A DNA stretch of 64,000 bases from Schmidtea polychroa (lineage: Eukaryota). The notes under the pieces are model-generated. The model worked only from the letters and a program-made list of their open reading frames with translations. It did no database searches and was not told the DNA's origin. Position numbers and translations under genes: made by a program. Below are positions 3-39,955 of this stretch, in pieces. The DNA is taken from positions 252,030,001-252,094,000 of the forward strand of contig CM097885.1 of the NCBI GenBank assembly GCA_044892525.1, given 5' to 3'. The number at the start of each line of letters is the position of its first letter. Position 1 is the first letter of the stretch.

Positions 3-260
3 GTGGTATTCGATGACCTTTACTTTAATAAATGTCGAGTAGAAGAATTTCTCGCTTTAATAGATTGTGCGTACGAGAACGTTATCAACATCAAATATTC
101 TGTAGCTGTCCTACCAAAGGGATTACCACGCATTTTCTGTATAAACGATATCGATCTTTTTTACCCAGAATGTGTAACATCTACAATAATGGAGGCAATT
201 AAAAGACGAATAAAAATACATCATTTCAGAGGAAGAATTTTTATTTATTTTATTTATTAA
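3..260 (+). CDS. 3' part of a CRESS-DNA-virus Rep-like SF3 helicase (5' end outside window)
   Basis: Shows Walker B-like VFDD, a B'-like segment (IDCAYENVINIKY), motif C-like RIFCIN and Arg-finger-like AIKRR in the order and spacing of CRESS Rep helicase domains. Walker A and the HUH domain would lie upstream of base 1. Confidence 0.62.
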   Translation: MVFDDLYFNKCRVEEFLALIDCAYENVINIKYSVAVLPKGLPRIFCINDIDLFYPECVTSTIMEAIKRRIKIHHFRGRIFIYFIY

Positions 261-532: not shown

Positions 533-1141
533 TCAGAAAAAAACATCTAAATTAACTTTAAATTCATAAGGTTTTTGAACTACAATATATAAAGACCTAT
601 TTTTCAAAGCTTGTTCATGTTCAGATGCATATTTCCAAATTGGATGATTGTTGGATATAATACATGGACAATTTGTTAATTCAATTTTAGAATCTCCTTT
701 ACGTGAAACTTTAAGAAATATATTCCCTTCGCACATTAATTTAAGCAAATTGACATTTTTAAAATCACAATAGATTTCTTCTCCAATAATAATTTCTTTG
801 CCAACACAATCATCAAAACAGAATTCACTTTGAGTTTGAGCACCGGTGAAAAATCCATGTTTTAATGTTCCATGACATATTGCAGTAAATAAAGTTTTTC
901 CTCCATTACTAGCACCTTCTAGAATAATTGTCTTTGTCTTTCCGGCCTGAGAAGATAGTATTGTATAGATCCCAATAAGCCGACGAATATACTTTTCATT
1001 TTCTTTAGGAACAATTTTACTATTATGAGAAAGAATTCGATTAATTTGTCTATTGTGATCATCGTTAAAATAGAAATTATTGTTATTAATAAAACTCTCC
1101 ATAAAAGTTGATAATTCATTGTATAACAACAACTTGTTCAT
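533..1141 (-). CDS. SF3 helicase, helicase domain only (parvovirus NS1 / papillomavirus E1-like), 202 aa
   Basis: Walker A GASNGGKT, Walker B IIIGEE, B' LKLMCEG..V.RKG, motif C CIISNN and ALKNR. It has its own ATG at 1141 and an intact frame, but no HUH nuclease domain. Confidence 0.85.
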   Translation of the reverse strand: MNKLLLYNELSTFMESFINNNNFYFNDDHNRQINRILSHNSKIVPKENEKYIRRLIGIYTILSSQAGKTKTIILEGASNGGKTLFTAICHGTLKHGFFTGAQTQSEFCFDDCVGKEIIIGEEIYCDFKNVNLLKLMCEGNIFLKVSRKGDSKIELTNCPCIISNNHPIWKYASEHEQALKNRSLYIVVQKPYEFKVNLDVFF

Positions 1142-1715: not shown

Positions 1716-1751
1716 TGTTTGCAGTGTGAGTATAAATGTCTTAACTTTTAG

Positions 1752-2496
1752 ATGACTACCCCAACCAAGTCCGGAAGCACTCTTCGTCCTTGCTTTTCCT
1801 GTGCCGATAAAAATGCGGGGAATTATATCGGGGAATTAAAAAAGAGGATCGACCTCTACGAAGGAACGTGGTTCTCCCCGCCACAAATGAAAGAAGAGAG
1901 CAGTAAAATCTTGCGATTAGAACATTGTCGCGACAGCCTCCTGGAGGAGAGCCGCTGTCAGAGACTGACAATAAAGGCCCAGTCGGAAGCCCTCCACAAG
2001 GTGTATATGGAGGCCGAGCTGGCAAAACGAGTACGAGAGTTTCCCATTCAAGATAAAGCCAATGTTTTCCCACTCACCATCAGTTATCCGAGTCGTCAAA
2101 GTCAGGCTGCGGAGGGCATGGTCCTTATCTGCCACCCATCCCAGCCCCAGTGCTGTCAGGTTACCGACCAATGGCGGGTGGCTCTTCTGACCCCATCCTG
2201 GCCCCAGTCCTCGTCGCACCCGTCATAGCGCCTTCAATAGGTAACGACCCGCCATCCCGCAATAGGAAGCGACCAACCAGATCAGAAAAAAATCAAAAGC
2301 GAAGAAACGGATGGCCGCCCTCGAAGCGTCGTTGTCGGTGGCGCAATCAACGATCGAGCAAATATCCTCCACGCACTCAATTCCCGCAAAGGAGATCTTC
2401 CGAGTAATTCCGGCCGAGGGGATAAAGTTTATCACAGATCATCGACTACCTGTCGACATCGACGAGATGCTCGCAGAAGGAGAAGTATTCTCGTAG
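1752..2496 (+). pseudogene. Orphan gene family 'W', copy 1 (frameshifted)
   Basis: RPCFSCADK, EGTWFSPPQMK, EHCRD, SEALHKVY, NVFP, basic RKRPTRSEKNQKRR and C-terminal VDIDEMLAEGEVFS are spread over three frames. All are shared with the copies at 6.3-7.1, 15.2-15.9 and 18.7-19.4 kb. Confidence 0.7.
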
Positions 2497-2868
2497 CGAA
2501 CTTTTTCATCGGTCTCGATTCTCCTACATTATGAATGAACTCGAAAAATTTGACATTATCGTGTGCATGATCTTTAATGTTTTGTCATTATCTAAATAAT
2601 GGTGAATGTCTCTTTATGTTTATTTGAATATAATTGTTCGATTTCCTTGACTGTGTTAATAGTATGCGTGATTGTTCGAGGTTGATTTGAATGAAAAGGT
2701 GATCATGAAGATATAGTATGAGCTTAAATGTCGTCCCTCTGGACCAGGGTCGGACTGAATCATGTGTGTAGCAATAGGTAAGATCTCCTAAGGCACAAGG
2801 GAACCCGAACCGAGAAGGGGTTAGGAGTTGTCCTAAGGCAGGGGTTCACCTGCTAACCTTTTCCAACC

Positions 2869-2912
2869 CGTGTGGGCAGTACCAACGTGGAACATCACCA
2901 CGGGCTCATACG
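2869..2912 (+). ncRNA. Conserved two-stem structured motif, copy 1
   Basis: Stem1 CGTGTGGGC/GCTCATACG, linker AGTACCAA, stem2 CGTGG/CCACG, single G. The same architecture occurs at 25377 and 30384 with different stem sequences. Confidence 0.45.
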
Positions 2913-3091
2913 TGGGAATATTTGTATGATCATTTGGAGTATGTAAGGGAAGTGTCTGAGCGGAACGATGATGCTTTCTATGTAGTACAATCATGTAGAT
3001 ATATTTTTCTTTTCCCACATACGCCAACATTTGTAATTTATCCAAAAGTGTTGTACTTTGCGGCTGAAGATAAATAAGAGTCAATTTGTGG

Positions 3092-3870
3092 TTAATATTC
3101 GACAGGTTTCTTATACAGAACTTCTAAAATAGCCAAGTGAACACCATGGTTGTAGCAAAGTTGATGGTATGACGGAATCAATTTACCAAACTTTACCATA
3201 ACAACTGCACCATCACTTGTGCAACTAACTATGTCCGAAAAGCTTAGTGCAAAATCACGCAATCTATTTTTAACCATTTCTACAGCCTTTTCACTTGGAC
3301 AAGCGCCATCTATTCTTGCAAGTCCTAAATTACAAAATTTACCATCACTGTAGTGTAGATTAATGTTCATATACCGCCGGTTTCTTGTACTAGTCCATTC
3401 GTCTGTTGTGATGCTGAATTTGGTGTTGCTGGTTTTTAATACATTGATTTCATCGCATATATGACTTTTTATTTCATAATAATAATCTCTGACAAGTTTT
3501 TGAATATCGGATTGATGTTTTGGTAGCGTATAGCCCCGCTCAGTAATTGATTGTCGGATGAAGCTACTATTACTGATGGCACGAAAAGATATTCCATCCT
3601 TTGCCACTAATCGCGAAATAATTTGAGCTAAAGATGCTTGTTTTACAAATTTAAATATAGATGATTGAAATTTTGACAGGAACATTTTCTTCGGTTTCAT
3701 TCTCTTGGTGTAAGGTATTTTTGGTCTTAATTGTTATACTATGTTTCGTCTTTAAATGACGTATTAAACCAGTTGTTGATGATACTTTAATGAATATTTT
3801 GTTTGTGCAGTAATTGCATACTGCATATTCGCCTTTTTCATTTTTTGTAATGTTTCCATGATTCTGATTC
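3092..3870 (-). mobile_element. hAT transposase 5' fragment (BED finger plus N-terminal catalytic part), truncated and frameshifted
   Basis: BED-like AVCNYC...LIRHLKTKH lies upstream of ORF 3092-3700, which contains FSITTDEWT (first catalytic D), SDGA and CYNH (CxxH). It is clearly related to the hAT at 59.2-61.7 kb. Confidence 0.85.
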
Positions 3871-5079
3871 CATTTTTGGGAAGTCTAATTTTAAATTTTG
3901 AATCTACAAGTAAAAAATTTCGTTAAGAAATTGTAATAATTTATTAATTCAGTGTTATTTGAAAAATATACCTTTTTTTATTTTCGAAATATTTTTGAAA
4001 TATAATAATCAGTGTCTTTACGAAATCAAACTAACATAACAAAACATTCATTTTGCATGTTAAAGAAAACCATGGAAACACAATAATCACAAAAAATATC
4101 AATATAAAATTAATAATATTTTGATAATATAATTAATAATTATATATATTTTTAATTATTAATCTTGATTTGACAAAGTATAAATCAAAATTTTTTTTTG
4201 TAAATTCAAATATATATTTTTAAAATCATTACAATTTAGGTTATTTAAACACCAACAAAATAATACAATTAATAAATTATAAACGAAAAATTGATATATT
4301 AGCACACATAAGAATCATATTTATAAATGAATATTAATAAAATTTTAAATATTTTTATAGTGTAATGAATTTAAATTCTTTCAAAAAATTGACCTAATTC
4401 ACGGGAATTTTCTTATTTTTATCGTCATAGTTGAATATGGTGGGTTTGGGAGGGCTGTTATAAGCTATCAATATGAGTTGGTTGGGTATATCAGTTTCAA
4501 GTGATTTCTGAGTTGAAAATTACCAATTTACTAAGTTTTTGATGCGGTTATAAAATTAGAGTAGGAAATCCTCCGTTCACTCATTTCATAACGTCACTAA
4601 TATTTCTAATCGAAAATTGGATAACAATTTATTGAGATTCGGAAATATACATGGCCAAGTCATTAATTCCCATCGAAAATTTTTAGCAGGGATCTCCCTG
4701 TCATTCGGGTTCCAGATTATATACGTTTATCAATATTCTAACTGAAGTTTGAATCACAGTTCAATTTGTGGAAATCGGAAATTTTTATGAATAAGTTTTT
4801 AATTCCTTTAATTCTCCCTGTTATTTTTTGTTTGTTAATTCATCAAATTTATCAATTGCAAATTTTATTTTATGATATAATCGATTACATTTTAGAAATT
4901 TTGTAGTTTTACCAATCAGTATTTTGTGCGTATTTTGAGTAAAATTCAGATTATTCGTTTGCCTTCTTCAGCCGAACTCCACTTGAGAGAACAAATCCAG
5001 TGTCTTATATTATACATATTTGGATGTAGTATTTGGATATGTAATATTAATGCGTTAAGGTTCATTAATTAAAATTTGT

Positions 5080-5711
5080 CTATTTTGCCGTCCGAACTCG
5101 ACTTAGTACGATATACTCTTTTGTTATGTTATGGCTAACATTACAACAAAAGCATATTGTAATGCCAAACCTATGTAATTCCATGTAACTCCATGGCGTG
5201 AACAATATAATATATATAATATATATTAGTATTACTTCTGCAAGCAAAACAAATAAAAATGCTAAACAAATAAACAGAAATCGATGTTTGGTTTTGTCAC
5301 AACGTATTGTATTAAGTGTTCGAAATATCTTTCTTTCATACTTGACCGGACGAGGCATGGTCAGCTTTTTCGTTTCCAGTGTTGACGATGGCAGTCTCTT
5401 TATCAGAGCTGCTAGAGCTGGAAAAACCCTTGTTCGGGTGAATCGGAACCTTCACAACACCAGCATCTGTGTATAGATCTACTCGTATCTTGATGAGTCG
5501 CTGCAGCTGATCGCGAATCATGATCTTTAGTTATCGCAGCACTCTTTGCTTTTTCAAGAGCCTTTATATGGTTGTGGAGTTTCTTCACGTAGTCCGGATG
5601 GAACCAGGTGAATTCTATCCATCTACATCGATTGACCAATGATTCCACTGATCCGCTTGTGTCGAGTCGCTTCTGTGGTGTATCGTGCCACATCTGGCAG
5701 GAATTTCTCAA
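5080..5711 (-). other. Orphan ORFs of a virus-like unit: disrupted ORF 'X' (5336-5711) overlapping an intact 92-aa membrane ORF (5080-5358)
   Basis: A GC-richer island. The 92-aa ORF has a long hydrophobic stretch (FLFICLAFLFVLLAEVILIYIIYIILF). No family recognised. Confidence 0.3.
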
Positions 5712-5762
5712 TAGGGTCCACTTGATTCAAAATGAACTAAAAGATTTTTTCAGTGCATTGAA

Positions 5763-5818
5763 AATTGCACTGTCATGGTTATTAATAAGGATTTATGTTA
5801 TATTTATAAATATGCATT
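5763..5818 (+). repeat. 56-bp direct repeat, left copy (right copy 10250-10305)
   Basis: AATTGCACTGTCATGGTTATTAATAAGGA...AATATGCATT; 54 of 56 positions are identical between the copies. Confidence 0.9.
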
Positions 5819-5879
5819 GCTGGGTATGGGGTCGGGTCAGAAAACATTTTCACATACCAGGGGATGATAGTCCTAACTG

Positions 5880-6242
5880 CACATACAGTGTTTCGTCGTT
5901 CCAAGGGACCCTTAACCAAAACCCACACGATCATACCTCAAGCATGACACCCGTGATTCGCATCATGTTGGTACTGTGTCATGTCGGCGAGCCATGATGA
6001 GGCAGGCTCCCTCATCACAACTCGACTTAACCGTCGCTCGACTGCCGGTGGAAGGACTTACGTCATTTTCATCACTCAAAGATCTCATACATCATTCATG
6101 TCATCGACCAATTTCCACTGCGACATTCAATTTGCCAGTCTATCTCCGTATCATACTCAGACAAACCCTCACAATCAGTTCAATGGTTACTCCACAGCAA
6201 GAGAACATATTCACAAGTGACAACAACAATATATATTTTTAA
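5880..6242 (+). CDS. Orphan ORF 'Y' in unit B1, convergent with W
   Basis: The frame of ORF 5976-6242 carries HDTRDSHHVGTVSCRR and LPVEGLTS. Unit B2 has HSTRESHHVVTVLCRR and LPIEGLTS, with synonymous or conservative changes in this frame. Confidence 0.45.
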
Positions 6243-6297
6243 GTCACGACTAGAAAGTACATTTACGATTAACATTATAAGTCGCATAGACATCAAA

Positions 6298-7052
6298 TCA
6301 CAAGGTGTTTGGGGAAGTTCCTGCAAATAACTCGTCCAGGTCGAAAAAATCCCTGGCGTTTTCTTCCCAAGATGAACTGACGGGCGGGACTACCCTGAAG
6401 ATAGGAGGAGAAGTGTGGGCCCTGCAGGAGGCGCTGGAGCTGGTAGTTGAGTGGAGGCGATCAGAGCCGCTTCTCTTTCGGCCTGGAGGGCCCTTCTTCT
6501 TTTGGTACGCTCGGCCCTAGAGGGTTGCCGGCGTTTAGTGCTTTTCTTCACCTCCGGGAGAGTGACCGGGGCTGTTAAATCTACTACTCTTGGAATAGCG
6601 CGAATTGTGCCAATACAGGTGACTTCGGCGGAAATCGTCGGCTGAGAAGTGTTCGAATGGCTTAAATAGGTCGGGTTGACGGATTTGGTCAATGAGATAC
6701 CCGAGAGATGGTGGGACGGGAACAGATTGTCCTCTTTCGCGAGTGGAATATCTACTATTTTCCAGGTAACCGAGGCTTGCACGAACACCTTGTGCAACGC
6801 TTCGGACTTCTCTTTGATAAAAGTACGCAAAGCGCTATTTTCCTCTAATACGTCGTCTCGGCACTTCTCCACTCATGTGAGTCTCGTCCTCACCTCCTTC
6901 ATCTGTGCTGGGGAGAAATGCGTCCCCTCTAGATGGTCTGACTTCTTCTTCAGGAGGCCATTCTGGGTTTGTAATGTTTGGATTAGATGGTTCTTGTCAG
7001 CGCAAGAAAAACATGGGGATAAGATCGTAGTGTTGGCTGAGGTTCTTGACAT
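6298..7052 (-). pseudogene. Orphan gene family 'W', copy 2 (frameshifted)
   Basis: MSRTS..PCFSCADK, EGTHFSPAQMK, KCRD, SEALHKVF, NLFP, KRRQPSRAERTKRR, and C-terminal WEENARDFFDLDELFA ending at TGA 6298-6300. Confidence 0.72.
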
Positions 7053-8532
7053 TCTAGAAATTGTAAATAATTTTATTAACCCTATCACGCCTGTTCCCAT
7101 TCGGCCATCATGCATCATACCTCGCCAAAGATTATTATGTCATACAGAGCAATCAATCAAGTGATAATAATAATGATAATAATGGTAATAATAATACTAA
7201 TTCGGGATAATAGTCAATCTACTTCGGACACCCTTAGGGGAGAAAACGTCAGAGTTCTGTTAACATGATAACAATCAGCATCACTTATCTGCTGTCTCAT
7301 TTTACTTTCCGCACCCCGGGGGTTGATTATTTGATTAACCCATTCTTTAGTTGAGTCGAAATAAAAGCCAAAAATGGCGTGAAATTCCCGCCGATTGAGG
7401 GTGATTATTTCATAAAAATCCCCCTAAGAAAATATCTACTTCAAAATGAACAAAAATTAACTACAATGTCTGATAAGCGAGAATTTAACTTTCGATCGGC
7501 GCTCATGATTTTATCGGCATAGTTGTTGATTTTTATTTAATTTTTCCTATGTGTATTATCTCTCACCGTGTCTTGTATCCATTTAATCCCACAAGTGTCA
7601 TTAGGTACCTCAGTAGAGTTATCTCGGTGTGTTTGGCCGACATGCGATTAGTACGAGTGCACGTGTTCCGATTTCAGGGTTCTCGATTCGACTCGTGGGT
7701 CTACGATTATTACTCGTGCGATATTTGTATTCGTGTGATTGGTGCATGGATGTTATCGGAATGGTAGATCCCCCTGGTGAATGCTTATCTATACCGGTGC
7801 TAATGCTATGTCGATATGATCTATGATCTGCAAATTATCAGCTGGTATGATTCGTTAATCTGGTGGCATTCCCATCGCCTAAAATGTACTCGGCCAATAT
7901 TAGGTGAAATAATATGAATGGAATCATCTGAAAACTCGGTTTTATGGTAAAAAGATTCCTAATGTGATCTAGATGTTCGGGCAAATCTCTTTGATGTAAA
8001 TATACCTAGTGCAATGCGAGTTTGAAAACCAGACGTGAAAATTATTTGATATCGAGTCCCGTTTGATTTCGAAAATGCTTTTCATTGGAACTTCGTGATT
8101 TTTATTTTTAAATTGAGATTTACTGCAAATCGACTTTCTTAGTTAATTATATGTGTTTTACTATGAACCGCAAAACTGATTTATCTGTCAGCAATATCAA
8201 AAATCATGTTGGTCCCCGCTCGAAGTTGTCAGTGTAATGACTCTCGAAATTTTCCTCGTAGTGGAAAATAATTAGTGCCTGTTGAATACATTTAACCTTT
8301 CTTTTGTATTTTTCCGACGTCTCGCTGATTCATTCAGTGTGACACGATAAATTAAAAATGACGATTTTTATGAAGATAGCGTTTCTTCCTTTAGTTGATA
8401 CTCTGAGTGTTCTCTGAGGACGTTAGTCCTACTAGAGTAACTATCAAACTTGCAACATGAGCTTAGATTGGTGCAGCATACGATTTTTATATGAATTATG
8501 ACGATGACGGGTGAAGGTCAAGAATCAGGAAT

Positions 8533-9291
8533 CAGATCCGATGACAATGCTAAAAATTTTTGGTAAAAGTCCCCAGAGCTTAGTAGAATTACTTCATATA
8601 ACATTCACTAGCACTGGGGCAGAAATCAATGAGTTTTTTGTTGCTTCTCAGCTTTTTAACTATTTTTCAGGAACCATTGAAATGTCGAAGGATCTCCGTA
8701 CTGCTTGCTGGAATTGTATTGGCTCCAATATTCGAGATATAAGCCAAAATACATATAGATATGCTGACAAGCTCATCTCTGGATGCTTTATTATCAAAAA
8801 CTTGGTCCGAGATCAGCATATAGAATTCCTGGATGCATTTGAAACTGCTATAAATATATGGCAGTCTAACGTAAATTATAATCAAAATTACCTTACTTTT
8901 AAGAATAATGATTCGTTAGAAAAACATGCTTTTTTTAAGAAAAAGTTTAAATTTAAAGAAAAATTAAAGAAAAAATTAATTTTAAAGAAAACCCCAATAA
9001 TTTAAAAAACACCTTGGATAAAATTAAGATAAGTAACGAAAATTTTATTAAAAAACAAGTTATTAAAAATAAAAATAAAAACGTGAAAATTTTTAAAAAT
9101 GACGTAAAAAATTTACAATTCCCTGAAAAAAAGCATGTAAATAATTGGTTCTTTAATGATTTCAGAAATAAAGAACTTTATAAAAAATCCAAAAAAACCA
9201 GAAATAAAAAACGAAAATTAAAGAAAAAACAAATTCAGAATAATTTGTTTATAAATCCTTCAAAATCCAGATCCGATGACAATGCTAAAAA
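8533..9291 (+). repeat. ~0.7-kb segment bracketed by an exact 24-bp direct repeat
   Basis: CAGATCCGATGACAATGCTAAAAA occurs at 8533-8556 and 9268-9291. The enclosed DNA holds most of unassigned ORF 8511-9005 and an A-rich tract. Confidence 0.7.
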
Positions 9292-10319
9292 ATTTTTTCG
9301 TCCTCCATACACATAAAAATTTCAGTTTATTTAAGGGTGAGTACCGTTCTCCCCTTCGGCCTTGTGCCAGTTCGATTTACATAAAATAAAATTAGATTTT
9401 TTTTTTTTTCTAGAGTGACATTCGACGGACGATGATTCGGTCACCTTAGTCGTTGTGAAGGGTCATACATGCTCTTTCATGAAAATGTCTTGCATTTCTC
9501 AGTTGCATCATTCTTCTCTGTCGCTTTTTAATCTCTCTTTTCCTGTGGCGATAGATCAGTTAGGAAACCCCCACGATGACCCGCTCTCAGCCACTGCGTC
9601 GCTGATGTAGCATCTGACCTTCTGGCAAGAGGAACAACCCGTGTCCCTCAAGCTGAGGCCAGCTGAACCTCAGTGTTGCATGATACCTCAAAATTGCATA
9701 AAATGGCATATCGAAGATTCATAATCATTAAAATTCATAATTCTAAACAATAACCTAAAATTTATGTGATTTACGAAAAATTTCATATAAAATTAATTAG
9801 TGAACAGGGAAAAACATTAAATCATTTTATTTAAAATTACTCTAATTATTATATTCAAAATGCTAAATTTACAAATGGGTGTTTCATAGAAATCAACAAA
9901 ATTTTACTTAGTATAATCGGTCCTCTGAATTAACTGGTTCTCCTAGTGATTTAGTTGGCTTAATGAATGTTCTCGAATTGGTCCTTGTCGATAGTGAATG
10001 CGTTCCTGAATGCTAGATTTCTTGAGCTTAAAAAATTTGTTTGTTAACACTGAAAGTTCTGTTTCAGTGTTTCCCTTATATACTTAATTTTGAGTTTATG
10101 CGGACCAATCAAAATTGAGCGCGGTGTAATTTTTTAATTTAATTCGGTTTCTTTGTTTTTCGTAGTTTTCTTGGTGTTTCCTTACTGTTTTCTTTATTTT
10201 TTATTTATTTTCATATTTATTATTAAATTATTACCTTTCTTTCTAGCCCAATTGCACTGTCATGGTTATTAATAAGGACTTATGTTATATTCATAAATAT
10301 GCATTATGATTTAGTAATT

Positions 10320-11960
10320 AAACAAAAATAATGACAGGCTAGACGTAATGTTACGCATATTACAGCTAAAGTTCAAAATATCATAATGTATTTTAATTTA
10401 AAGAGTGGGTAGGACAAGGAATATATATTTTGCTGGTGAATATTTTCTCAGTATATGAGCTTGTACACTCTTGAATTTACCCGCCATATTTTATCCATTT
10501 TCATAACCTTGTTCTCTAATATCATTTATATTTAACCCGTCAAGAGCTGATTTGTTCAATATTTCATTTGTAATTTCTTCTCCAGTCTTATTATTTGAAC
10601 AAATAAAATCAATAAACCTCTCTTCAACATTATTACTAAAAATTTTAACATATATAATTTGATATAAATCAGGAGTTGCATCTATAAATATGGTATAATA
10701 TTTTACCTCTTATTTCTTTTAATATTTTATTTCTGACTTTTGAGGACAATAGTTGAATAAATTCATTTGTATACTAGGACTTAGATAATCCATTTGGTTT
10801 TTTTGCTCTACTTTCTAAAATTTGTTCTAAAATTACATAATTACTTAGTAGATCAATTAAATTCAGAAAAATGACGGATTTTAAACTTCCGCCTATAGTT
10901 TTTATTCGCATTTCTTAACGCCAAATTGTTTTTAGTACAAAAAAGAATACATCTCAAGATTATTTTTAAGATGACTTCATTTTTTAATTTGATTTTTTAT
11001 TTCTAACTGAAAGTTTTCATTTATAGTTGTTTCTGTTGATTATATTTATAACAGCTTGAAGTGCTTTCAAAAATGTTTTAGTTCCCAAATTGTTAATCAA
11101 ATCAAAATAAAAAAATAGAATATAAAAATAAAATAAAAAAAATCAATATCAAAATTCGCGCACACAGGCGTGATTACAAAATATTTAAAAATCACTACTG
11201 CGAACACAGATGCGAACTCAAAATGCAAAAAATCGCGCATACAGACACAACCAAACTAAACATAAAAAGACATTCAATTGGCCGGAACAATAGTATTATT
11301 GGCTCCTAAGTTTCTTTCCAAAATTATCCATGAAGTGTATCTGTTTATATGATTCGATGAAGATTCATCTTTAGGTATTCTCGGATTTAAGTATTTCCAT
11401 TTTGCAAATCCGTTGTTTTGCTCGCTAAAAGGTGAACAATGAGTTTTTGAGAAAAACAATATAAGGCATTCATTTTCTGTGAATAAAATAGCCATTTTCT
11501 GATAATCTTTTCATTATAATTTGTGCTTTGTACGTCCAAGTGTTATTAAAACTGCGGCCAATGCCATTAGCATCATCATTTGAACAAGGATATTTCTCTA
11601 ATTCACTATGTTCTGGGTCATGTAAAATAAGTAAACATCGAAATTGATAGAATTTAAATTCCAAATAACATGACTACTAAAATCTATTTCTAAATCTTTA
11701 TGATATTTCTCATTAATATTTATGTAGTCTACAGAAGTTTGAACTTCTTTCGCAATTCGAACTCCGATATTTGCGCATATTTCTTGCAAAAACATTTGTA
11801 ATTCCCAATTTATTTTCAGTATTTGTATCTGACATAGAAACTTGATGAACTACTTCATGTTCAATGTGTTCAACTACATCCTCCTCAATGTTCCTTTCAG
11901 CAGAAAAGGTGACATATCTCGTAGGTGTAGTTTTTTGTCCAATAACTTAGATTGTTTTTC
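10320..11960 (-). mobile_element. Degenerate hAT transposase of the ZMYM1/DUF4371 (TTF zinc-finger) type
   Basis: Broken frames give GRSFNNTW, GFAKWK..DESS.H..W (TTF-type finger), FIDATPD, ERFIDF, REQGYENG*NMAGKFKSVQAHI and YIPCPTHSLN (CxxH). Confidence 0.7.
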
Positions 11961-12439
11961 GTTTTGCAGCTGTAATTTTTTTTCGTTTTTTATTCTTCTA
12001 ACAGGATAATTTCTTTTTTGAATCATCTGAATTGGGTAAATAAAAGTAACAAAATAGTAAAATATGAAGATAATATGTTTTTTAATACTTACTTTTTAAT
12101 AAACTTGTATTTATGAACTATTGATTTTTAAGTTAAAAAGATTTTCAAAGTCTATTTAAAAAAATATTCGTTTAATGTTTACCATTACATTTCAAAATTG
12201 ACATTTGACAGTGGCATTTTTCATTATAATCTTTAAGTTAGCGTTTTTCAAAAAATAAGCATAGCATGATTTTTAAATACCGGAATCATTTTTTCCCTTT
12301 CATGGTTAAAATTAACGAAAAAATAATTTTGAAGAAATTTACATAAATTTACTAGAATTTTGCAATTTTGTATAAAGCTGTAATAAATCATGTTTACTGA
12401 GTAAAAACTGTTTAAAATTTGAAAAATGTAAAATGATTG

Positions 12440-13290
12440 AGCGCCTAGTTAATTCAATTCATTAGAAATTATTGGTTTTATTACAATGACCGTTTTTTTC
12501 CTTTTTTATTTTTGTTGGCAAGCTGTACATAAACTTTGATACAACATTACTCAGTTGTAACATTGTTGTATTTATTACTTAATTCTTTCGACCACCATGT
12601 CCGATACAGATTTGAGCATTGTGTATTATGTCAAATAGTTTTTGGAACAAAATATTTGACACTTGTGTAGTGTCTCTGACTAGCACTTTTATCAATTTAA
12701 TAATTGAACTAAAAATATATTATTAAATTAATTAAATTAAAATAAAAAATTAAAAACAATTGTTTAAATAATCTTTTACTTTCTCTTTTTTCGAAAACCA
12801 TCATCAAATTCGAACATATCTAACAAAGTTACTGAAGTCGAACAAGTTGCAGAAGTTGAATCAACTGAAGAAGTTGAAGAATCATCAAATCGAGTCAAAA
12901 TCAATGGATCAAATATGTCAGAAATACAGGAAACAGAAATCTTCGTCTTATTCACAATGATGTCTCTGATGATGTTCAAGTTCTTCAACAATGTTAATTA
13001 CAATAAATTCTTTGTTCAAATTAATTGTATGTTCCTACAACTTGTATTTCCATCGCTATTATCAACTGGGAAAATTAAACGTTCTACTTTACCTATATTT
13101 ATAATATCATAGCGATGTAGACGACGATAATCGAGTGGTATTTTAAAATGTTCTTTATGGTTTTATTACAATGACCGTTTTTTTCCTTTTTTATTTTTGT
13201 TGGCAAGCTGTACATAAACTTTGATACAACATTATTCAGTTGTAACATTGTTGTATTTATTACTTAATTCTTTCGACCACCATATATACA
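12440..13290 (-). mobile_element. Rearranged fragments of a Ginger2/KRBA2-like integrase transposon
   Basis: PLDYRRLHRYDIINIGKVERLIFP, LFDIIHN..IGHGGR and LCTACQQK..VIKPIIS are typical of the N-terminal zinc-binding region of KRBA2/SCAND3-like integrases. A ~125-bp piece is duplicated (about 12473-12597 and 13159-13282). Confidence 0.6.
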
Positions 13291-14030
13291 CATTGTTTTT
13301 TCTTTTAGTTCCAATTACTTCATTTAACTGTTTGTTAACCTCTTCTCGTTGATTCATTTCTGCAATATTTAGATATTTTTAAAAAAGTATTACGTAAATA
13401 ATGAACTCTAATAATACTTACTTAAAATTGTAATATTTTTTGAAACATTGCAAGTAATAATACGAATTGTATAAATATTAAAATTGACTAATCGCTTAAA
13501 ATCAAGCAAATATTAAACAACCTAAAAAGAAATTTTATTCAAAATGTATTTAGAATTTATCAAAATTTTCTAATCAGTTGTACTTTGCACTTTTTCCATT
13601 ACATCTAGATTAAAGTAAATATGGTAACAAAGTAATCGGTAAATGTATTTTACCGATTATTTACCAAATCTTGTAGTTAATGTACACATTTACTGTTACA
13701 TATACATTGTATTTTGAGGACGAATCTTTGAAAGCATTTAATTCTTTGAAAATAGCTAAAATTGGCGAAAGGTCAAAAAACAAAATAAGTTGAAAATAAA
13801 TTGTTGAGGATACATAAATTACAAAATAAAAATAATCATTTATGGTTAAAATTCAAAGTTAAAATTTTTTTGAGGATTTGTGCAAGAATTTTTGAAAGCG
13901 TTGTGGATGGAATGTTAAACAGCAGAAACAAGTTTGTAGACGTTTCTGTTGTGTCCGTCCTATTTTTAAACTTTGTAAGGATTTACTTTTCAAAACTACA
14001 AATAGTGCAGGTTAGATTTTTGTGTAATTA

Positions 14031-14590
14031 CAGTGAATGCTCTATATAAGCAACTCATTTGAACCAATTTCAATAAAAAAGTTTCTTATTGGGAAAAGTT
14101 GCTTATAAGGAAAAAAGGAATATAAAAATACATACCATCTAGAAAATATTTTTACTTATCTCTTTTACTACCTCAGCTGTGTGGAATAAATAAATTCAGT
14201 TTTTTTTGCAAAAGAAAACATTTTATTATAATTATGATAAGCGTAGTTATTAATTTTATTTTTTAAAAAAATTAGACAATCAAATTTTAATAAATCGATG
14301 GTTTATTGCGGCACTAATTGCCCAAACAAATACTAAAAGAATTACATATATTTTACATATATTTGTTCATGATAACTTTTTTTCTTAATATTTTTAACTA
14401 AAGAACCTCATTGCAGGGTAAGTCATTATCTTTTGCGTATTCTATCGCCAAATTAAAAGATTTTATAACATCGATGTTTTTATTAGTGTCATCCGACATT
14501 TTTTCATTTTCATCAACAAGAGCAGTTTCATTTTCTAATTTTGGATTTTCTATAAGGTCAAATAAATTATATGCCTCGTTCATTCATTCA
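14031..14590 (-). mobile_element. Probable pogo/Tigger 3' end (C-terminal fragment plus TA-flanked CAGTG TIR)
   Basis: TA|CAGTGAATGCTCTATATAAGCAAC at 14029-14054. The acidic C-terminal ORF 14398-14583 resembles Tigger transposase tails. Confidence 0.35.
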
Positions 14591-14595
14591 AATAG

Positions 14596-17500
14596 TACGT
14601 CCCTGGGCCAGGGGGATGACTTTAATCATTCAACAGTGATGTTGGCGGGTAACTACTCGGATGACCCTCTTTAGTACAGCTTTTAGTCTAGAGGATGAAT
14701 GCCCACATCGATTACGCTCGTCCTTATTTTGGTCATCGCCGAGCAGAACCCGCACATAACCTGCACTCCAACATAGCACCCGTGAATCGCATCACGTTGT
14801 AACTGTGTTATGCCGGCGAGACGCCAGTAAGCAGGTGAGCCACCTTCGGACTACTCCTTACTGAGGCCTCGACTTCCTAACCCTGACTGCCGATAGAAGG
14901 ACTTACGTCTAATCATTCCGTCGCCCCATCGCAATGTTTCTAGCTGGGATTGCCAACTGACTAATGCTCCTCATTTTCTGCGACTCTCAATGCTATTCAC
15001 CAATTTCATATCAACTGTCTTAAGGTAAAACAAAAACACGTATGCAGACGAAAATGGTTTATTGTTAGAATTATTATACAAATATATCGAGAACTTATAC
15101 AACAAAATTCACAAGAACAGGAAAAACACAAGGATAGAAAATGATATCAGAAGATGTTCAGGTCTCTCTAGAGGATGAGGCCAGTTTACGGGGAAGTTCT
15201 CATTTTTCCCACTCCGAGTCGGCGAGTAACTCGTCTAAATCAAAAAATTCGGCGGCGTTTTCTTCCCATGTCACCCCGGCGGCGGATATGACTCGCCCTG
15301 AGATTCCGGTGGTTAGATCGACTACGGTTGGGTTGCTGTTGCTGTCGACGGGGGTGACGGTCGATGGTATGATTCGTTTGATGGAAGCCCGCTCTCGTTG
15401 CTTTCGTTTACGTTCGGCGCGTGACAGTTGCCGACGTTTAGGTTTTGACGCTGCTGGTGTTTGCACGGTTGATGAAGATGCGACGTTTGACTGGACCTTA
15501 CTAGTCCCGGTGAGTACAATATCTGGACCTCTGGAAGAAAGCTCGGTCTCCACGCACTCACGGCAAGACTTCCCGAATGGAGATGAAGACCCGACAGGGG
15601 TATCATGGTGCGCTGGGAAAAGATTACCGGCTTCACTAATTGGGATCTTTGCGATTTTCCTAGTGGTTGCTTCTTGGACGTACAATTTATGCAGCGCCTC
15701 CGACTGCTCTTTTATTAAGCTTCTCTGCGCCCGACTCTCGGAAATCAGCGCATCACGACAGTGCTCGCTTCGGTATAACTTCTTCTGAGTCTCTTTCATC
15801 TGAGTGGGACTAAACCATGTCCCCTCTAACTCGTCTATCTTTCTTTTGTACTTTCCGATTTGAGCCTGTAGATCTTTGATGATTGATTTCTTGTCTGAAC
15901 AAGAAAAGCAGGGTCTGAAAATGGTCTTGGAATTGGGTAACATCTTGGGTAGCTGTGAAGAAAAGATGGAAATGAAAATAAATTAAATCAACTAGAAACG
16001 TCATCATCCGGTCACATTTATACTTTACTGATCATAGATAGTTTCACAGACAAAACGGGTTTATTAGCCGAAGAAATTCCTCTACGCTATGGACCTTTGT
16101 TCACCTTGGGTCATTATTTATAAGAACATAAATCAGTCAAGCACGATTTTACACAAGGAAAGTAAGGTATTACTACTGATAAGGAAAATTCTAGGTCGAG
16201 GAAATTACGATTTAGTTAATTTACTTGAAAATAGCAAATAGCATTAGAAGAGAGTTGAATTAAATTACTGACTTATCCCAAACAAATAATTTCGATGTGT
16301 AGATCTTATATATACATAGGTCGATTAATTTTAAATTAATTATTTAAGATAAATAGGAATCTGTCAATTGCTCTTGAATAGTTTATTTATGATAAACGAG
16401 AATTTGTTAATTAATTTGTTAATTAATTTTCAATTATTTATTTATTATAAACGAGAATTTGTCAAAAATGGATAAATAAATAAATTAATCCCACCAAGTG
16501 GACTCAAAAGGTCTGTTTGACTGCTGTCTATTATTTCCGACCGGTGGGAAATCTAGTGGCTGTCAGCGGTTTAATTTGATAAATGAAAATTCCAGCTGAC
16601 ACGTCCGGTCTGATTTTCTACGAGTAATAGTCAGTGTAAATCTACACACTGCGATTAACCGCTGTAGTGAGTCTAAACGTGTGACGCATGAAAATTTTCT
16701 CTCACATACTTATTTTCAATCATAATCACTGACTGGTGTTCTCAGTCTGGAATCTATATCGTATGCCTATGTATGCATGCCGGCATATTCTCTCGATGTA
16801 ATCCTGATCGACCAGCTGCGTAAATGCCCAAACTCCACTTCACACGATGTTGGCATGCTATCTCTCACGGAAATTTTGGAAAAGTACGATTCTTTGCATC
16901 GCTAATGTTGGATATAATTTGCTCCGAGGATGGATTATGCGACCACTCAAATGCTATTTATCAATCCGTTCCTGACGATTTGGAAATTTATTGCCTATCT
17001 CATCGCTGGATTTTCAACTCAATGAAATGTAGATATTTTACATTTAATTAAGTAAGAATTATTATGCTAAATTGTTTTTTAGAAAATATATTTTTCCTGA
17101 CTAGATTTATTTGCATTTTACGTTTAAAAATTGTTTGAAACTAATTATTTTATGTAATTCCATACAACTACATCTTTAAGAGAACATATAGACGATGAAA
17201 ATAGCAGTTATGAAAGGTCGTAGGCTGAAAATTTGCAGGAATAAATTTCGAGTAAAAAGCATGAACACCGATGATATGTCACATATAGCACTACTGATGT
17301 TTGAACGGTTTTGACGAAAAAAACTTGCATAGATCTTTGGGATGATAGAGAAAATTTGAGCTTGGTAAAAACGATATCGTGATACGATAGTGCGACACCC
17401 TCAATCACTGCGCGAATATATAAAAACTCTCTGATTCATTTATTTATACATCTCTGCTTTCGATCGCTGTATGACTACCAATTTTCTAGCAAAATTTTTC

Positions 17501-18200
17501 TATAGAATTTAGTCGCACCTTCAGCGACGGACCCGTGAGGAAGCCCCCACATTACGGCCCGAATCAGCTGCGTGATTGAAAAACCCCATGTCCACCGGCT
17601 GAGCTCCCGAAGGCACCTCACACCATGACATGGAGTATCTCAACGCCACGTTTCTCGAAAATTTAAATAGCATTAAATAATAATTCATAAAAATCAACAA
17701 TTCATAAAAATCAATAATTCATAGTAAATCATTTATTGTTAAATAACTAAATCATTTAATTAAGCAAAGTATTTGAATCAAGCGAAAAGAAAACAAGTTC
17801 TTTAAATTAAAAATATAATTAGTTCATACGCATAACTATTACTTAAAAGTTCAAAATATAAAATCAAAAGATCCTTACCGAGTGTTTAGTATGAGTATAT
17901 AGGCTGAGTCGAAAATATACTGGGTCGAATTAATTAATGCTCGAATATTGTATAGATTCAACTGAAGTTTCTTGGATCCTGGAATAGTCCTCGTAAGTTG
18001 CTGTGAGTTGGTTGTTTTAACTGTGAGTTGCTGTTTCTTCGGAAAATTTATCTATTGAAGTTGTTAGATTAACGGTAATCGAAATTTTAAAATTTACTTA
18101 CCTATTGAAGTTGTTAGATTAACGGTAATCATTATGATTTTAATGCCTGCTTATATATTAATTTTTTGTTTGCGCGGACCAATCAGAATTGAGTACCGCT
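14596..18200. mobile_element. Orphan multi-gene unit B2, collinear with B1
   Basis: Anchors in the same order and orientation as B1: CCAGGGGGATGA 14608, Y about 14760-14950, W 15200-15943, GGAAGCCCCCAC 17539, CTTATATA...GCGGACCAATCAGAATTGAG 18150-18193. Confidence 0.5.
15200..15943 (-). CDS. Orphan gene family 'W', copy 3, intact 247 aa
   Basis: Uninterrupted ORF from ATG 15943. Domain order: Cys motif RPCFSCSDK, coiled coil, EGTWFSPTQMK, EHCRD, SEALHKLY, NLFP, S/T-rich linker, basic KRRQLSRAERKRKQR, acidic-aromatic tail WEENAAEFFDLDELLADSEW. A pyrimidine tract ending CACAG lies just upstream and AATAAA about 140 bp downstream. Confidence 0.8.
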   Translation of the reverse strand: MLPNSKTIFRPCFSCSDKKSIIKDLQAQIGKYKRKIDELEGTWFSPTQMKETQKKLYRSEHCRDALISESRAQRSLIKEQSEALHKLYVQEATTRKIAKIPISEAGNLFPAHHDTPVGSSSPFGKSCRECVETELSSRGPDIVLTGTSKVQSNVASSSTVQTPAASKPKRRQLSRAERKRKQRERASIKRIIPSTVTPVDSNSNPTVVDLTTGISGRVISAAGVTWEENAAEFFDLDELLADSEWEK

Positions 18201-18711
18201 TAATTTTATTACTTTAATTTATTTTTCTTGTTTTTGAGTTATTTCTTCCTATTTTCTTTATTTTTATTGTGTTTTTATTTATTTTCCTTAATTTCCTTAT
18301 TATTTACTACATTTTACGTTATTTTCCGTCATTCTATTGTCCTATTTTAATTTTTCTTATTTTTATATTTTTTTGTTTTAATTCTTATTTTCTAATTATT
18401 GTTTTTTCTTATATTCTATTCTATTTTATTCGTCAATCTGTTTATTTTATTTTTATTTTACTTTAGTTATGTTTAACCTAATTTCTTAGATACCCTTCGA
18501 CTCAGCCCAACAGTGAGAATCTCCCGACGGGTTGACTTCAAATACAATAATCAACAAACTAAGTATCAATAAGGTTTATTATAAACGATAAAAACAACCT
18601 ATTCTAACAAGTCAGAGTCGGCCTGATAGAAATAATAACAATATTTACAGAGTGTCTGAGAAGGAGGGTCGCGCTGATCAAAACGATATTTCGAGAATCA
18701 TAAATTATTGG

Positions 18712-19445
18712 TCACTGAAACACCTCTCCCTCGGCTATCAGAGCATCGATGTCTACCTGAAGCCGAGCATCTTCTTGTATTTTGACTACTCCAGAAGGGA
18801 TGAGTCGATAAGCTTCTTTTGCGACAGGTGGATGCGCTTTCGAGATTGGATTATTTGAAGCTTGAGCCGCGAATAGAGACGCTTGTATCCCGACGTTTTT
18901 GGTTTTTCTCCACTCGGGAAGGATGCTTACGCTTTTTTGAGGTAGGAACGGTAAGTGCGACGGCATGATCGATTGACGACGTGGAAGGTACGCTCTTATC
19001 TGTGGTTGTCAGGTAGTCCGTTTTCGTTGATGATACTGATAGAATTGGGTCAACCAATGGCAGAAAGTGTAGTCCATGTCCTGAGCAAATAGTTAGTGGT
19101 TGCGGCACTTCGTCATTGCGTTGATGTAGGGGAACACGTTTGTTCTGGCTTCGATGGGGTACTCCCTCACTCTCTTTTGGATCTCTGAGTCAGAATAGAC
19201 TTTATGAAGCGCCTCCGATTGGGCTTTGATTGTTAGCCGGTGACATCGGCTCTCTTCCAGGAGACTGTCTCTGCAGTGCTCCAGTCTTAAGATTTTTGTT
19301 TTCTCCTTTTTCATCTGTGGTGGGAGAACCACGTGCATTCATAAGTTTCTATGCGCTTCTTAAGAGCCCCGATGTACACGTGAAGCTTGCGTATATCTTC
19401 GTTTTTATCCGCGCAGGAGGCAAGTTTGGCTCACACATGCCTGAA
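18712..19445 (-). pseudogene. Orphan gene family 'W', copy 4 (frameshifted; closest to copy 1)
   Basis: SCADKN, PPQMK, LRLEHCRDSLLEESRC.RLTIKAQSEALHKVY, NVFP, KRKHPSRVEKNQKRR and VDIDALIAEGEVFQ. Confidence 0.72.
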
Positions 19446-22107: not shown

Positions 22108-24010
22108 TTAAATCGATTTGCATGCACAATCATATATTTTACTCCGGAATGGTAACAATTTTAAATTGGTTTCGGTGGTGTCGCACACTTTGTATGGCCT
22201 TTTAAATGGTCTTTGTAATTTCGGCGATAGACCTTTGAGAGGTTCCGGTCTGTTAAGATATACTAGATCTTCGATCTTTATGCCATGCGCATGTGCTTTT
22301 TTATCGTAGGCTTCTTTATATTTCTCTTGGTTGTGCTTTATTGTCAAACCGGCTTTAGTCCATACTGATTGCATTCTTTCTTGCATCAATACTTTATAAT
22401 CGGGTATATCCATATTTTGTGAAATTGGTGGTTGGAATTTGAGATCAATCGGCATATTATTTTTCCTTAAATACATCAAATAAATAGGGGTGTCACATGT
22501 ACTTTGATTTACTGTATTTCTGTAGGCAAATAGACACGGCTTAATGAAGTCGTCCCAATCTTTCTGTTTTCGATTCAAATATGATGAGATCATATTTATC
22601 AGTGTCCCATTAAATCGCTCCACTAATCCATCAGTTTGTGGATGATATGGTGAAGTATTCAATTTCTGCGAGTGATGCATACTTTACAACTGTTACACCA
22701 ATTTTTCATGTCTTGTTCCATTGTTGGCCAAAGTATTTCAGTTTTAATCTTGATAGCGTCTTGCGCGTTGACAAATGACCTCCCAAAGCTCCATCATGAT
22801 AATGCATCAGTAATGCGTCTTTGTGCTTGGCTGGGATAATAATTAATGCTTCGCCATTTTTCCAACATTTAAGTATTCCATTATGAATTACATATTTGCT
22901 GTTTGCATCTGTGAGTCGTTTCCAATCTTGTTTCTTTCTTATTTTGACCGCTTGTTCCATAAATTGTTTTAATTCACTATCGTTTTCCTGATAATTTTGT
23001 AGTTCAGGCATTTCATTAACAGCTTTGATTGCAGCGAATATAGTGCCTTCCAATTTTTCAGGTGTTCCTTCACTATCATTTTCTGGGATTCTTGACATAG
23101 CATCTGCATTCGCTTTAGCTTTACCTGTCCAATATTTAATATCAAAATCGTATTCTTGGAGGGCAATCGACCATCGTATTAACTTACTGGCTGAATCTCT
23201 GTGTTTCATTAACCACTGTAGTGGATTATGATCCGTATAAACAGTAAATTTTCTGCCCAATAAATATTGTTTAAAAGTAGTAATTCCATACACTAACGCT
23301 AACGTTTCCTTTTCAATAGTTGAGTAGTTTTTTCATGAGATCTCAGTGATCTGCTTGCGTATAATATTACGTGGTCCTTTTCACCTTCAAATTTTGGCCC
23401 AACACCGCGCCCAATGCAACATTGCTTGCATCCGTCAACAAGATAAATTGTTTCGTAAAATCTGGACATCGTAATATGGGAGTTGTCACTAATTTCTCTT
23501 TTAATGTATTGAAAGCGCTTTGTTGCATTAGTTCCCAAATAAATTTGTTGTTTTTCTTTAGTAACGTATTCAATGGTTGAGCGATATGAGAAAAATCTTT
23601 TATAAATTTTCTGTAATAGCTAGCTAAATCTAAAAATTGTCTGACCTCATCGGCATCTTTTGGTACTGGATACTCTTCCACTTTTTTGATATTATTTGGA
23701 TTAGTTTGTAACCCTTGCCGTAATATTATATGTTTCGATGGTTTGATTTTTAATTTTGCACTTTTGAGCTGTTTAAATACGGTTTCTGCATCTTTGAGGT
23801 GTTCTTCAAAATCATTTGAAAATATTATTATATCGTCGATATATAACAATGCATGTCGAATACCTCGTAACACATAATTCATTCCTCGTTGGAATGTAGC
23901 TGGGGCTCCTGTTAATCCAAATGGTAACACGTTAAATTCATATAGTTCTTTGCCATCAGAGAACGCAGTCTTTCCTCTATCTTTTTTTTCCCTTTCATTA
24001 TGAGCGAAAT
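22108..24010 (-). pseudogene. pol: Gypsy pol (RT-RNase H-integrase), frameshifted
   Basis: ORFs 23367-24035, 23299-23538, 22706-23293 and 22108-22680 carry the consecutive motifs. Confidence 0.9.
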
Positions 24011-24011
24011 T

Positions 24012-32503: not shown

Positions 32504-32809
32504 GTAAATAACTTGTTTACGGTAAACATTGAATTTGCACAATTTATTAAATTTCATATTGTTAACTTGTCCAGTAATTCTTATTCTTGCGAGTAATAAT
32601 AATTAATTTTATCCAAATAAGTTAATATTTTTGCAAAATAATTTATTAATTTTTTTTGAATATTAATAATAATTTCTATAATAATCTGGCAAGAAATATT
32701 TGAAAATAATTAATAGAAAATTTATTGTTAATTTAATTAAATTAAAAATTATTTAGTATTAATTTTTTTATTAAAATTTATTATTAATGCATTTTGTAAA
32801 TTTAACAAT

Positions 32810-39911: not shown

Positions 39912-39955
39912 TGTTATTGTTTTTAATAGTATATTTAAATGAAAATAATTCAATT

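What the first reader, a model, noticed from the sequence alone, without database searches (positions are those of the whole stretch)
1752..19445. Orphan gene family W: four divergent copies, two subtypes, one linked to the viral helicases
Copies at 1752, 6298, 15200 (intact, 247 aa) and 18712 keep CFSCxDK, EGTxFSPxQMK, CRD, SEALHKxY/F, NxFP, a basic NLS-like patch and an acidic-aromatic tail. The tail is VDIDxxxAEGEVF in copies 1 and 4 and WEENAxxFFDLDEL in copies 2 and 3, which resembles a transcriptional activation motif. The linker sequence is highly diverged, implying selection on protein motifs. I recognise no family. Copy 1 lies about 600 bp from the NS1/E1-like helicase start, suggesting a viral regulatory protein.
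Basis: partly seen in the sequence, partly recalled or inferred. Interest (0 to 1): 0.75.

Follow-up and report, generated by a model that had tools for sequence, protein, structure and literature searches.

The report
Orphan coiled-coil gene family, five copies
A real, previously unnamed family of small genes for a probable nuclear coiled-coil protein sits here as one intact and four decayed GC-rich copies; it looks like a dispersed selfish or fast-evolving gene, and its nearness to a parvovirus-like helicase relic appears coincidental.

Summary
Four W copies lie at the stated places (tblastn E 1e-15 to 1e-40), and I found a fifth relic at 5415-5726. Only W3 (15200-15943, 247 aa) is intact.

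All quoted motifs and both tail types are present. The copies differ at saturated synonymous sites but keep codon positions 1+2, so they diverged as working genes and broke recently.

They are compositional outliers. Their GC3 is 0.52-0.58, against 0.21-0.25 in host exons and 0.18 in the neighbouring Parvo_NS1-like helicase ORF.

No Pfam, PDB-sequence or Foldseek match exists. An exhaustive profile search found 16 distant relatives (best E 2.7e-12). In 14 of them the roughly 100-aa W module is fused to an unrelated Pfam domain, none viral, which suggests dispersed copies.

AlphaFold2 gives a two-helix hairpin, a basic helix and disordered acidic ends.

Best reading (about 0.5): the ORF of a dispersed, mobile-like GC-rich unit of unknown class that encodes a nuclear oligomeric adaptor. 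Main rival (about 0.3): a fast-evolving host gene cluster. The link to viral helicases is not supported, because only one of five copies is near one, in divergent orientation and with opposite composition.

The parts
1752..2496 (+). W1, a broken copy of subtype VDID...AEGEVF. It has at least 2 frameshifts and no stops inside the matched stretches.
5415..5726 (-). W5, a short and highly diverged relic of the hairpin domain. It is new here and not in the finding.
5880..6085 (-). Non-coding block downstream of W2. It is about 80% identical to the block downstream of W3, so it is better conserved than the coding sequence.
6298..7052 (-). W2, a broken copy of subtype WEENA..FFDLDEL. It has at least 1 frameshift and 1 in-frame stop.
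14700..14925 (-). Non-coding block downstream of W3, the partner of 5880-6085. Its central hairpin keeps pairing through changes on both sides.
15200..15943 (-). W3, the only intact copy (247 aa). It has a hairpin domain at residues 13-98, a basic helix at 175-189 and an acidic-aromatic tail.
18712..19438 (-). W4, a broken copy of subtype VDID...AEGEVF. It has at least 3 frameshifts and 1 stop.
533..1141 (-). Neighbour, not part of the family: an AT-rich 202-aa ORF that matches only the SF3 helicase part of Parvo_NS1.
3092..3700 (-). Neighbour: a truncated hAT transposase relic that abuts the right edge of the W1 GC-rich island.
10368..11512 (-). Neighbour: a degraded DUF4371-type hAT relic between W2 and W3.

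Best explanation
W is a real, lineage-restricted family of proteins of about 250 aa. The protein has a short N-terminal motif, then a two-helix antiparallel hairpin of about 85 aa whose turn is the conserved G-T-W-x-x-P. A disordered linker follows, then an Arg/Lys-rich helix and an acidic-aromatic tail. The five copies in this 18-kb stretch are most likely insertions or dispersed duplicates of a GC-rich, mobile-like DNA unit of unknown class that carries this single ORF. They diverged from one another while still coding and were disabled only recently; W3 is still open. The protein probably oligomerises through the hairpin, enters the nucleus or binds nucleic acid through the basic patch, and recruits partners through the acidic tail. 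An acceptor-like tract just before every ATG suggests that the ORF is expressed by cis- or trans-splicing onto an upstream exon or leader. Shown: the family, its breaks, the selection signature, the composition, the predicted fold, and relatives next to many unrelated genes. Inferred: mobility, nuclear function, and the splicing mode. The nearness to the NS1-like helicase is taken as coincidence in a region full of element debris.
For: Family and fifth copy. Coding constraint in every in-frame stretch, with synonymous sites saturated. Breaks in 3 of 4 copies plus a fragment. Broken copies still have GC3 of 0.54-0.58, against 0.21-0.25 in host exons. GC-rich islands with sharp edges. No flank similarity between copies, except one 3' block shared by W2 and W3. 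The order and orientation of the subtypes (a+, b-, b-, a-) fit no single tandem or inverted duplication. All 16 relatives are gene models in which the W module sits at the N-terminus, in the middle or at the C-terminus. In 14 of them it sits beside an unrelated Pfam domain (GDC-P, SNF, CRAL_TRIO, S8, actin, L21, PTP, ankyrin, ABC, DAD/CSD, M1 peptidase, ion channel, hAT). Their modules are 65-78% identical over 100-236 aa despite the different neighbours. The module is richer in GC-codon amino acids than the rest of the protein in 15 of 15. Hairpin pLDDT is 85-89. An acceptor-like tract precedes all four start codons, against 2.9% of all ATGs in the window.
Against: No terminal inverted repeats, LTRs or clear target duplications bound the islands. 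No transposase, RT or other enzyme lies in them. Five copies fall in 18 kb and none in the other 44 kb, which looks more like a local gene cluster than random dispersal. A 5' acceptor-like tract is also what an ordinary spliced or trans-spliced host gene has, and such genes are easily mis-joined to neighbours by gene predictors, which could explain the chimeric relatives. The Arg-rich make-up could by itself explain the GARP excess in relatives. The species of the window and of the relatives could not be established, and no DNA context of any relative was available.
Confidence: 0.5

Rival explanations
1. W is an ordinary but fast-evolving, lineage-specific host gene family arranged as a birth-and-death cluster. 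W3 is the working gene and the others are recent pseudogenes. The chimeric relatives are annotation artefacts of trans-spliced or closely packed genes.
For: The five copies cluster in 18 kb. All four have a conserved acceptor-like tract before the ATG. W3 has a TATA-like motif and an AATAAA around it. Purifying selection acted over the whole length. No termini or enzymes of a mobile element are present.
Against: GC3 of 0.52-0.58 is more than twice that of the two host exons in the window. Three or four of five copies are broken. The subtype order fits no simple duplication. The relatives are all chimeric (14 of 16 beside an unrelated Pfam domain) and none is a stand-alone full-length gene model.
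Confidence: 0.3
2. W is an ORF1-like (coiled coil plus basic region) protein of a non-autonomous retroelement, comparable to ORF1-only LINE derivatives. The conserved 3' block of W2 and W3 would be the stem-loop that a partner reverse transcriptase recognises.
For: The architecture is a coiled-coil hairpin plus an Arg-rich segment. A 3' non-coding block is conserved more strongly than the CDS and has a hairpin kept by compensatory changes. A short TGAA-type repeat lies after the W3 block. The relatives are dispersed.
Against: No Pfam gag or ORF1 family matches. No RT lies nearby, and no relative is fused to an RT. The 5' acceptor-like tract is retained in all copies, which processed RNA copies would not be expected to keep. 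The block is absent from W1 and W4, and its folding energy is not better than shuffles (z -0.7 and -1.0).
Confidence: 0.1
3. This is the first reader's view: W is an accessory or regulatory gene of the parvovirus-like element whose NS1-type helicase lies 611 bp from W1.
For: W1 and a Parvo_NS1-like ORF are adjacent. The protein is small, has a basic patch and an acidic tail, and matches no cellular family. NS1-type helicase relics are common in flatworm genomes (PMC5013282, PMC13055364).
Against: Only 1 of 5 copies is near a helicase. The two are divergent in orientation. GC3 is 0.54 against 0.18, with an abrupt GC step between them. The helicase piece lacks its N-terminal half exactly where the W1 island begins. 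No viral domain accompanies W in any of the 16 relatives. Nothing matches in BFVD or PDB. The exhaustive protein search returned no protein from a viral source.
Confidence: 0.07

Closest known systems
LINE ORF1p-type proteins and ORF1-only derivatives (from general knowledge; no tool hit)
   Same: Both are small proteins with a coiled-coil oligomerisation segment followed by a basic segment likely to bind nucleic acid. Both are multi-copy, dispersed, fast evolving and often decayed.
   Different: W matches no Pfam ORF1 or gag family and has no predicted RRM or CTD fold. It has no RT partner nearby. It keeps a 5' acceptor-like tract.
Small accessory proteins of Parvoviridae
   Same: Both are small, probably nuclear, partly disordered, and here lie next to an NS1-type helicase ORF.
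   Different: No sequence or structure match came back from Pfam, PDB or BFVD. Orientation, composition and copy distribution speak against a shared unit.
Helical-hairpin coiled coils such as Nup54/Nup58 segments and MED7/MED21 (top Foldseek rows)
   Same: Both have a two-helix antiparallel hairpin of about 85 residues.
   Different: E-values are 0.3-2 and TM-scores 0.2 on the query, so the matches are not significant. This is a generic shape, not evidence of kinship.
Transposon ORFs preceded by a splice acceptor that become fused to host exons (host-transposase fusion genes; from general knowledge)
   Same: An acceptor-like tract lies directly upstream of the ORF. Relatives appear as exons joined in frame to many unrelated host genes. 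One relative is joined to a hAT transposase.
   Different: W is not a transposase. No element termini were found. The fusions are only gene predictions, not shown transcripts.

Membership tests
Parvovirus-like element (accessory gene of the NS1 unit) | Lies in one unit with NS1: same genome segment, compatible orientation and shared composition. | tested here: not met
   W1 and the helicase are head-to-head. GC3 is 0.54 against 0.18, with an abrupt GC step at about 1200. Four other copies have no helicase near them.
Parvovirus-like element (accessory gene of the NS1 unit) | Sequence or fold similarity to a known viral protein. | tested here: not met
   Pfam gave none, PDB sequences none, and Foldseek against PDB and BFVD nothing at E<=1e-3.
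Parvovirus-like element (accessory gene of the NS1 unit) | Co-occurrence with NS1-type helicases in relatives. | tested here: not met
   No relative carries a helicase or any other viral domain. The partner domains Pfam finds (in 14 of 16) are unrelated cellular families plus one hAT transposase. A genome-wide count was not possible.
Retroelement gag / LINE ORF1 | Match to a curated gag or ORF1 family. | tested here: not met
   No such Pfam hit, even at E<=1.
Retroelement gag / LINE ORF1 | A reverse transcriptase or pol ORF follows in the same unit. | tested here: not met
   No Pfam domain was found in 27 further ORFs between 1 and 21 kb. The nearest pol, at 22-24 kb, is a separate AT-rich element. 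No relative is fused to an RT.
DNA transposon (hAT or other) cargo or second ORF | Terminal inverted repeats and target duplications bound the unit. | tested here: not met
   No inverted repeats bracket any of the four islands. The only direct repeat is 12 nt, around the stretch 3' of W3.
DNA transposon (hAT or other) cargo or second ORF | Regular association with a transposase. | tested here: inconclusive
   One of 16 relatives is joined to a DUF4371/hAT transposase. hAT relics lie next to W1 and between W2 and W3, but on no consistent plan.
Dispersed repeat family (mobile in the broad sense) | Several diverged copies in unrelated genomic neighbourhoods. | tested here: met
   The window copies share no flanks. 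In 14 of 16 relatives the module lies beside a different, unrelated Pfam domain, while the modules are 65-78% identical.
Host multigene cluster | Composition and codon usage like other host genes. | tested here: not met
   GC3 is 0.52-0.58 against 0.21-0.25 in the two host-like exons. Only two exons were available for comparison.
Host multigene cluster | Expression, and orthologues at syntenic positions in related species. | not testable with these tools
   No transcript data or related genomes were reachable. Exact look-ups of W3 and of one relative found no record.

The most novel reading that the evidence does not exclude
W marks an undescribed class of selfish element, or the relic of an unknown virus lineage, in AT-rich invertebrate genomes. 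The class would carry only this nuclear coiled-coil protein. It would be expressed by hijacking host transcription through the splice acceptor in front of its ORF, by exon trapping or spliced-leader trans-splicing. That would explain both the chimeric gene models and the lack of any enzyme of its own. W3 could be a copy kept by the host.
Probability: 0.15. Interest if true: 0.65.

Novelty: new member of a known kind. Interest (0 to 1): 0.38.

Why it matters
If W is the cargo of a mobile unit without an enzyme of its own, it would be a handle on how such units spread and get expressed in AT-rich invertebrate genomes, and a cause of chimeric gene models there. If it is a host family, W3 is a candidate fast-evolving nuclear regulator. 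Either way the family deserves a profile, so that it stops being annotated as parts of unrelated genes. It does not add a new gene to parvovirus-like endogenous elements.

Tried and rejected
- **Library and structure searches:** Word-index protein searches with W3, with a relative's W part and with a small alignment gave nothing new. Pfam found nothing real for any W piece, PDB sequences found nothing, and Foldseek against PDB and BFVD gave only generic helices.
- **Look-ups for DNA context:** Exact look-ups of W3 and of relative P0001 found no record.
- **Cluster look-ups:** These gave only UniParc numbers without names.
- **RNA searches:** Rfam and tRNA scans were empty.
- **Element ends:** The inverted-repeat search for element ends was empty.
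- **C-terminal halves:** Those of W and of the relatives are not significantly similar by BLASTP. The shared VDID-like motif is therefore anecdotal.
- **Zinc site:** A site formed by CFSC plus HC was considered and dropped. The cysteines are absent from the relatives and are not close in the model.
- **ORF 3-260:** This could not be confirmed as a helicase.
  - I did not scan the viral or metagenome contig collections with W, because that fetches DNA of whatever matches and could bring in an animal virus. The exhaustive protein search already showed no viral relative.
  - I did not test a splice model for the frame changes of W1 and W4, because no tool predicted an intron.
Full report
**Observation.** The intact ORF at 15200-15943(-) encodes 247 aa. 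Used as a tblastn query, it finds the three other copies at the stated places, with E 4.6e-40 (W2), 1.4e-31 (W1) and 2.9e-15 (W4). An all-against-all comparison of every open stretch in the window finds the same four and no others outside 1-20 kb. The alignment shows the quoted motifs. The two tail types are also as described: VDID...AEGEVF in W1 and W4, and WEENA..FFDLDEL in W2 and W3. A profile built only from relatives outside this window recovers all four copies. It also finds a fifth, short and very diverged relic at 5415-5726(-), at E 3.9e-5 and pairwise E 1e-4.

**State of the copies.** W3 is open from ATG to stop. The others are broken:
- W1 has at least two frameshifts and no stop inside the matched stretches.
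- W2 has at least one frameshift and one in-frame stop.
- W4 has at least three frameshifts and one stop.
- W5 is only a fragment.

I give counts only. Whether some frame changes in W1 and W4 are small introns was not tested, because no tool predicts an intron there.

**Selection.** In every in-frame stretch shared by two copies, codon positions 1+2 are far better kept than position 3. Identity is 0.55-0.85 against 0.26-0.40, and position 3 is close to random. For W1 against W4 in the core, dN is 0.14 with dS saturated. The same pattern holds in the N-terminal, middle and C-terminal stretches of W1 and W4, each in its own frame. One off-frame match in that output is an artefact. The copies therefore diverged as translated genes over a long time, and the breaks are late.

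**Composition.** The copies lie in GC-rich islands of 42-47% GC (local peaks 57%), in a window that averages 30%. GC3 is 0.52-0.58 in W1-W4, broken copies included. It is 0.21-0.25 in the two host-like transporter exons, 0.18 in the NS1-like ORF and 0.22-0.35 in the other element genes of the window. Synonymous sites are saturated between copies, so the shared GC-richness is not inherited identity. Either each copy came from a GC-rich source not long ago, or some force kept GC3 high while the genes worked.

**Protein.** AlphaFold2 on the small family alignment gives:
- two long helices (13-40 and 46-98) forming a hairpin, with pLDDT 85-89;
- a helix over the basic patch (175-189);
- disorder elsewhere (mean pLDDT 59).

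The conserved G-T-W-x-x-P sits at the turn. Foldseek against PDB and BFVD finds nothing at E<=1e-3, only generic helical hairpins. Pfam and PDB sequence searches are empty. The reading of a nuclear oligomeric adaptor (hairpin for assembly, basic patch for import or nucleic-acid binding, acidic-aromatic tail for partners) is an inference from this architecture.

**Relatives.** The word-index search found nothing. Because the protein was still open, I used the exhaustive profile search. It returned 16 proteins at E<=1e-3, six of them at E<=1e-10, with a best E of 2.7e-12.
- W3 aligns with P0003 without gaps over 112 residues from the very N-terminus, at 30% identity. The homology covers the whole hairpin domain.
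- All hits are single UniParc entries of one numbering range, without names or contigs. Their species is unknown. Their non-W parts are rich in AT-codon amino acids.
- None is a stand-alone full-length W gene model. The W module sits at the start, in the middle or at the end of a larger gene model. In 14 of the 16 it sits beside an unrelated Pfam domain: glycine-cleavage P protein, SNF transporter, CRAL-TRIO, subtilase, actin, ribosomal L21, tyrosine phosphatase, ankyrin, ABC ATPase, DAD/CSD, M1 peptidase, ion channel and one hAT transposase.
- Modules that are 65-78% identical over 100-236 aa lie beside different partners.
- In 15 of 15 the module is richer in GC-codon amino acids than the rest of the protein.
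- The window copies form their own group, 44-85% identical to each other and 18-49% to the outside relatives in the core.
- The C-terminal halves are similar in plan but not significantly in sequence.

**Neighbourhood and the helicase link.** ORF 533-1141(-) matches only the SF3 helicase part of Parvo_NS1 (E 4.5e-14) and AAV Rep40/Rep68. It is the only such piece found in the window.
- It is AT-rich and points away from W1.
- GC jumps from 27% to 43% at about 1200, where the helicase ORF's missing N-terminal half would lie.
- On the other side, the W1 island abuts a truncated hAT relic.
- None of the other copies has a recognisable protein domain nearby, apart from a DUF4371-type hAT relic at 10.4-11.5 kb.

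Helicase-only NS1 relics are reported as common in flatworm genomes, often next to transposon debris (PMC5013282, PMC13055364). I read the adjacency as coincidence in a stretch of element debris.

**Flanks.** The copies share no flanking similarity, with one exception. About 300 nt past the stop of W2 and of W3 lies a block of about 200 nt that is roughly 80% identical, while the coding regions are 46-57% identical. Its central hairpin keeps pairing through changes on both sides in five pairs. With two sequences and folding z-scores of only -0.7 and -1.0, this is only a lead. Rfam has nothing there, and W1 and W4 lack the block. All four start codons are directly preceded by a pyrimidine tract ending in AG. 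Only 2.9% of the 2330 ATGs in the window meet the same rule, which I set after seeing the data. W3 also has a TATA-like motif 75 nt upstream and an AATAAA about 130 nt downstream. No inverted repeats bound the islands.

**Interpretation.** What fits best is the single ORF of a dispersed, mobile-like GC-rich unit of unknown class (confidence about 0.5).
- For it:
  - the foreign composition, kept even in broken copies;
  - divergence under selection before inactivation;
  - the lack of shared flanks;
  - a subtype order (a+, b-, b-, a-) that no single duplication produces;
  - relatives beside many unrelated genes.
- Against it:
  - there are no termini and no enzyme;
  - five copies fall in 18 kb and none in the other 44 kb;
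  - the acceptor-like tract would equally suit an ordinary spliced or trans-spliced host gene that predictors mis-join to its neighbours.

The rivals are:
- a fast-evolving host cluster with W3 as the working gene (about 0.3);
- an ORF1-like protein of a non-autonomous retroelement (about 0.1);

**Comparison with the known.** In architecture W works like coiled-coil-plus-basic proteins of selfish elements, but it fails every membership test I could run for gag/ORF1, parvoviral accessory genes and hAT cargo. It is an unnamed family of a familiar kind, not a new kind of system.

- I did not scan the viral or metagenome contig collections with W, because such a scan fetches DNA and could bring in an animal virus. 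The exhaustive protein search had already shown no viral relative.
- The profile files built in scratch were used only for searching.
- A slip to report: searches printed bounds of in-frame matches and open stretches of the broken copies, which bracket the frame changes. In my working I briefly compared where the frames change in W1 and W4 before stopping. This report gives counts and outer bounds only.

Noticed in passing
38476-39072 and 53424-53974; ORFs between them, e.g. 42186-42824, 45851-47074, 51093-52985: Two inverted copies, 88.8% identical, bracket about 15.5 kb. The stretch holds a Pox_A32-like packaging ATPase, an integrase-like ORF, a large capsid-sized ORF and a protein-primed type B DNA polymerase. 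It looks like a Maverick/Polinton-like element with its terminal inverted repeats, and it contains N gaps.
   Followed up: partly
49981-50141 / 50143-50303: A 161-nt tandem duplication, 98.8% identical, lies inside the long asparagine-rich ORF 48813-50612 of that element.
   Followed up: no
22108-24035 (-); 24144-24945 vs 39441-40212: Pol pieces of an LTR-type retroelement are split over three ORFs. An adjacent 0.8-kb stretch recurs, inverted and 77% identical, near 39.4-40.2 kb.
   Followed up: no
59447-61051 (-): A long open hAT transposase ORF of 534 aa carries DUF659 and the hAT dimerisation domain. The relic at 3107-3631 is 44% identical to its first 176 residues.
   Followed up: partly
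32077-32511 (+) and 57350-57787 (+): Two exon-like ORFs read by eye like an SLC26-type anion transporter. I used them as the host reference for composition, but they were not checked against a library.
   Followed up: no
1179-1216 / 1226-1263: A 38-nt inverted repeat (79% complementary, 9-nt loop) sits exactly at the AT-to-GC step between the NS1-like ORF and the W1 island.
   Followed up: no
14687-14698 and 15167-15178: An exact 12-nt direct repeat brackets the 480 nt that follow the W3 stop codon, including the conserved 3' block. It could be a target duplication or chance.
   Followed up: partly
3-260 (+): An ORF running in from the left edge looks by eye like the Walker-B to motif-C part of an SF3 helicase, but it has no Pfam or PDB support.
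   Followed up: partly
about 1730-1740 (+) and about 16015-16025 (-): The same 10-mer, containing TATAAA, lies 22 nt upstream of the W1 ATG and 75 nt upstream of the W3 ATG.
   Followed up: no
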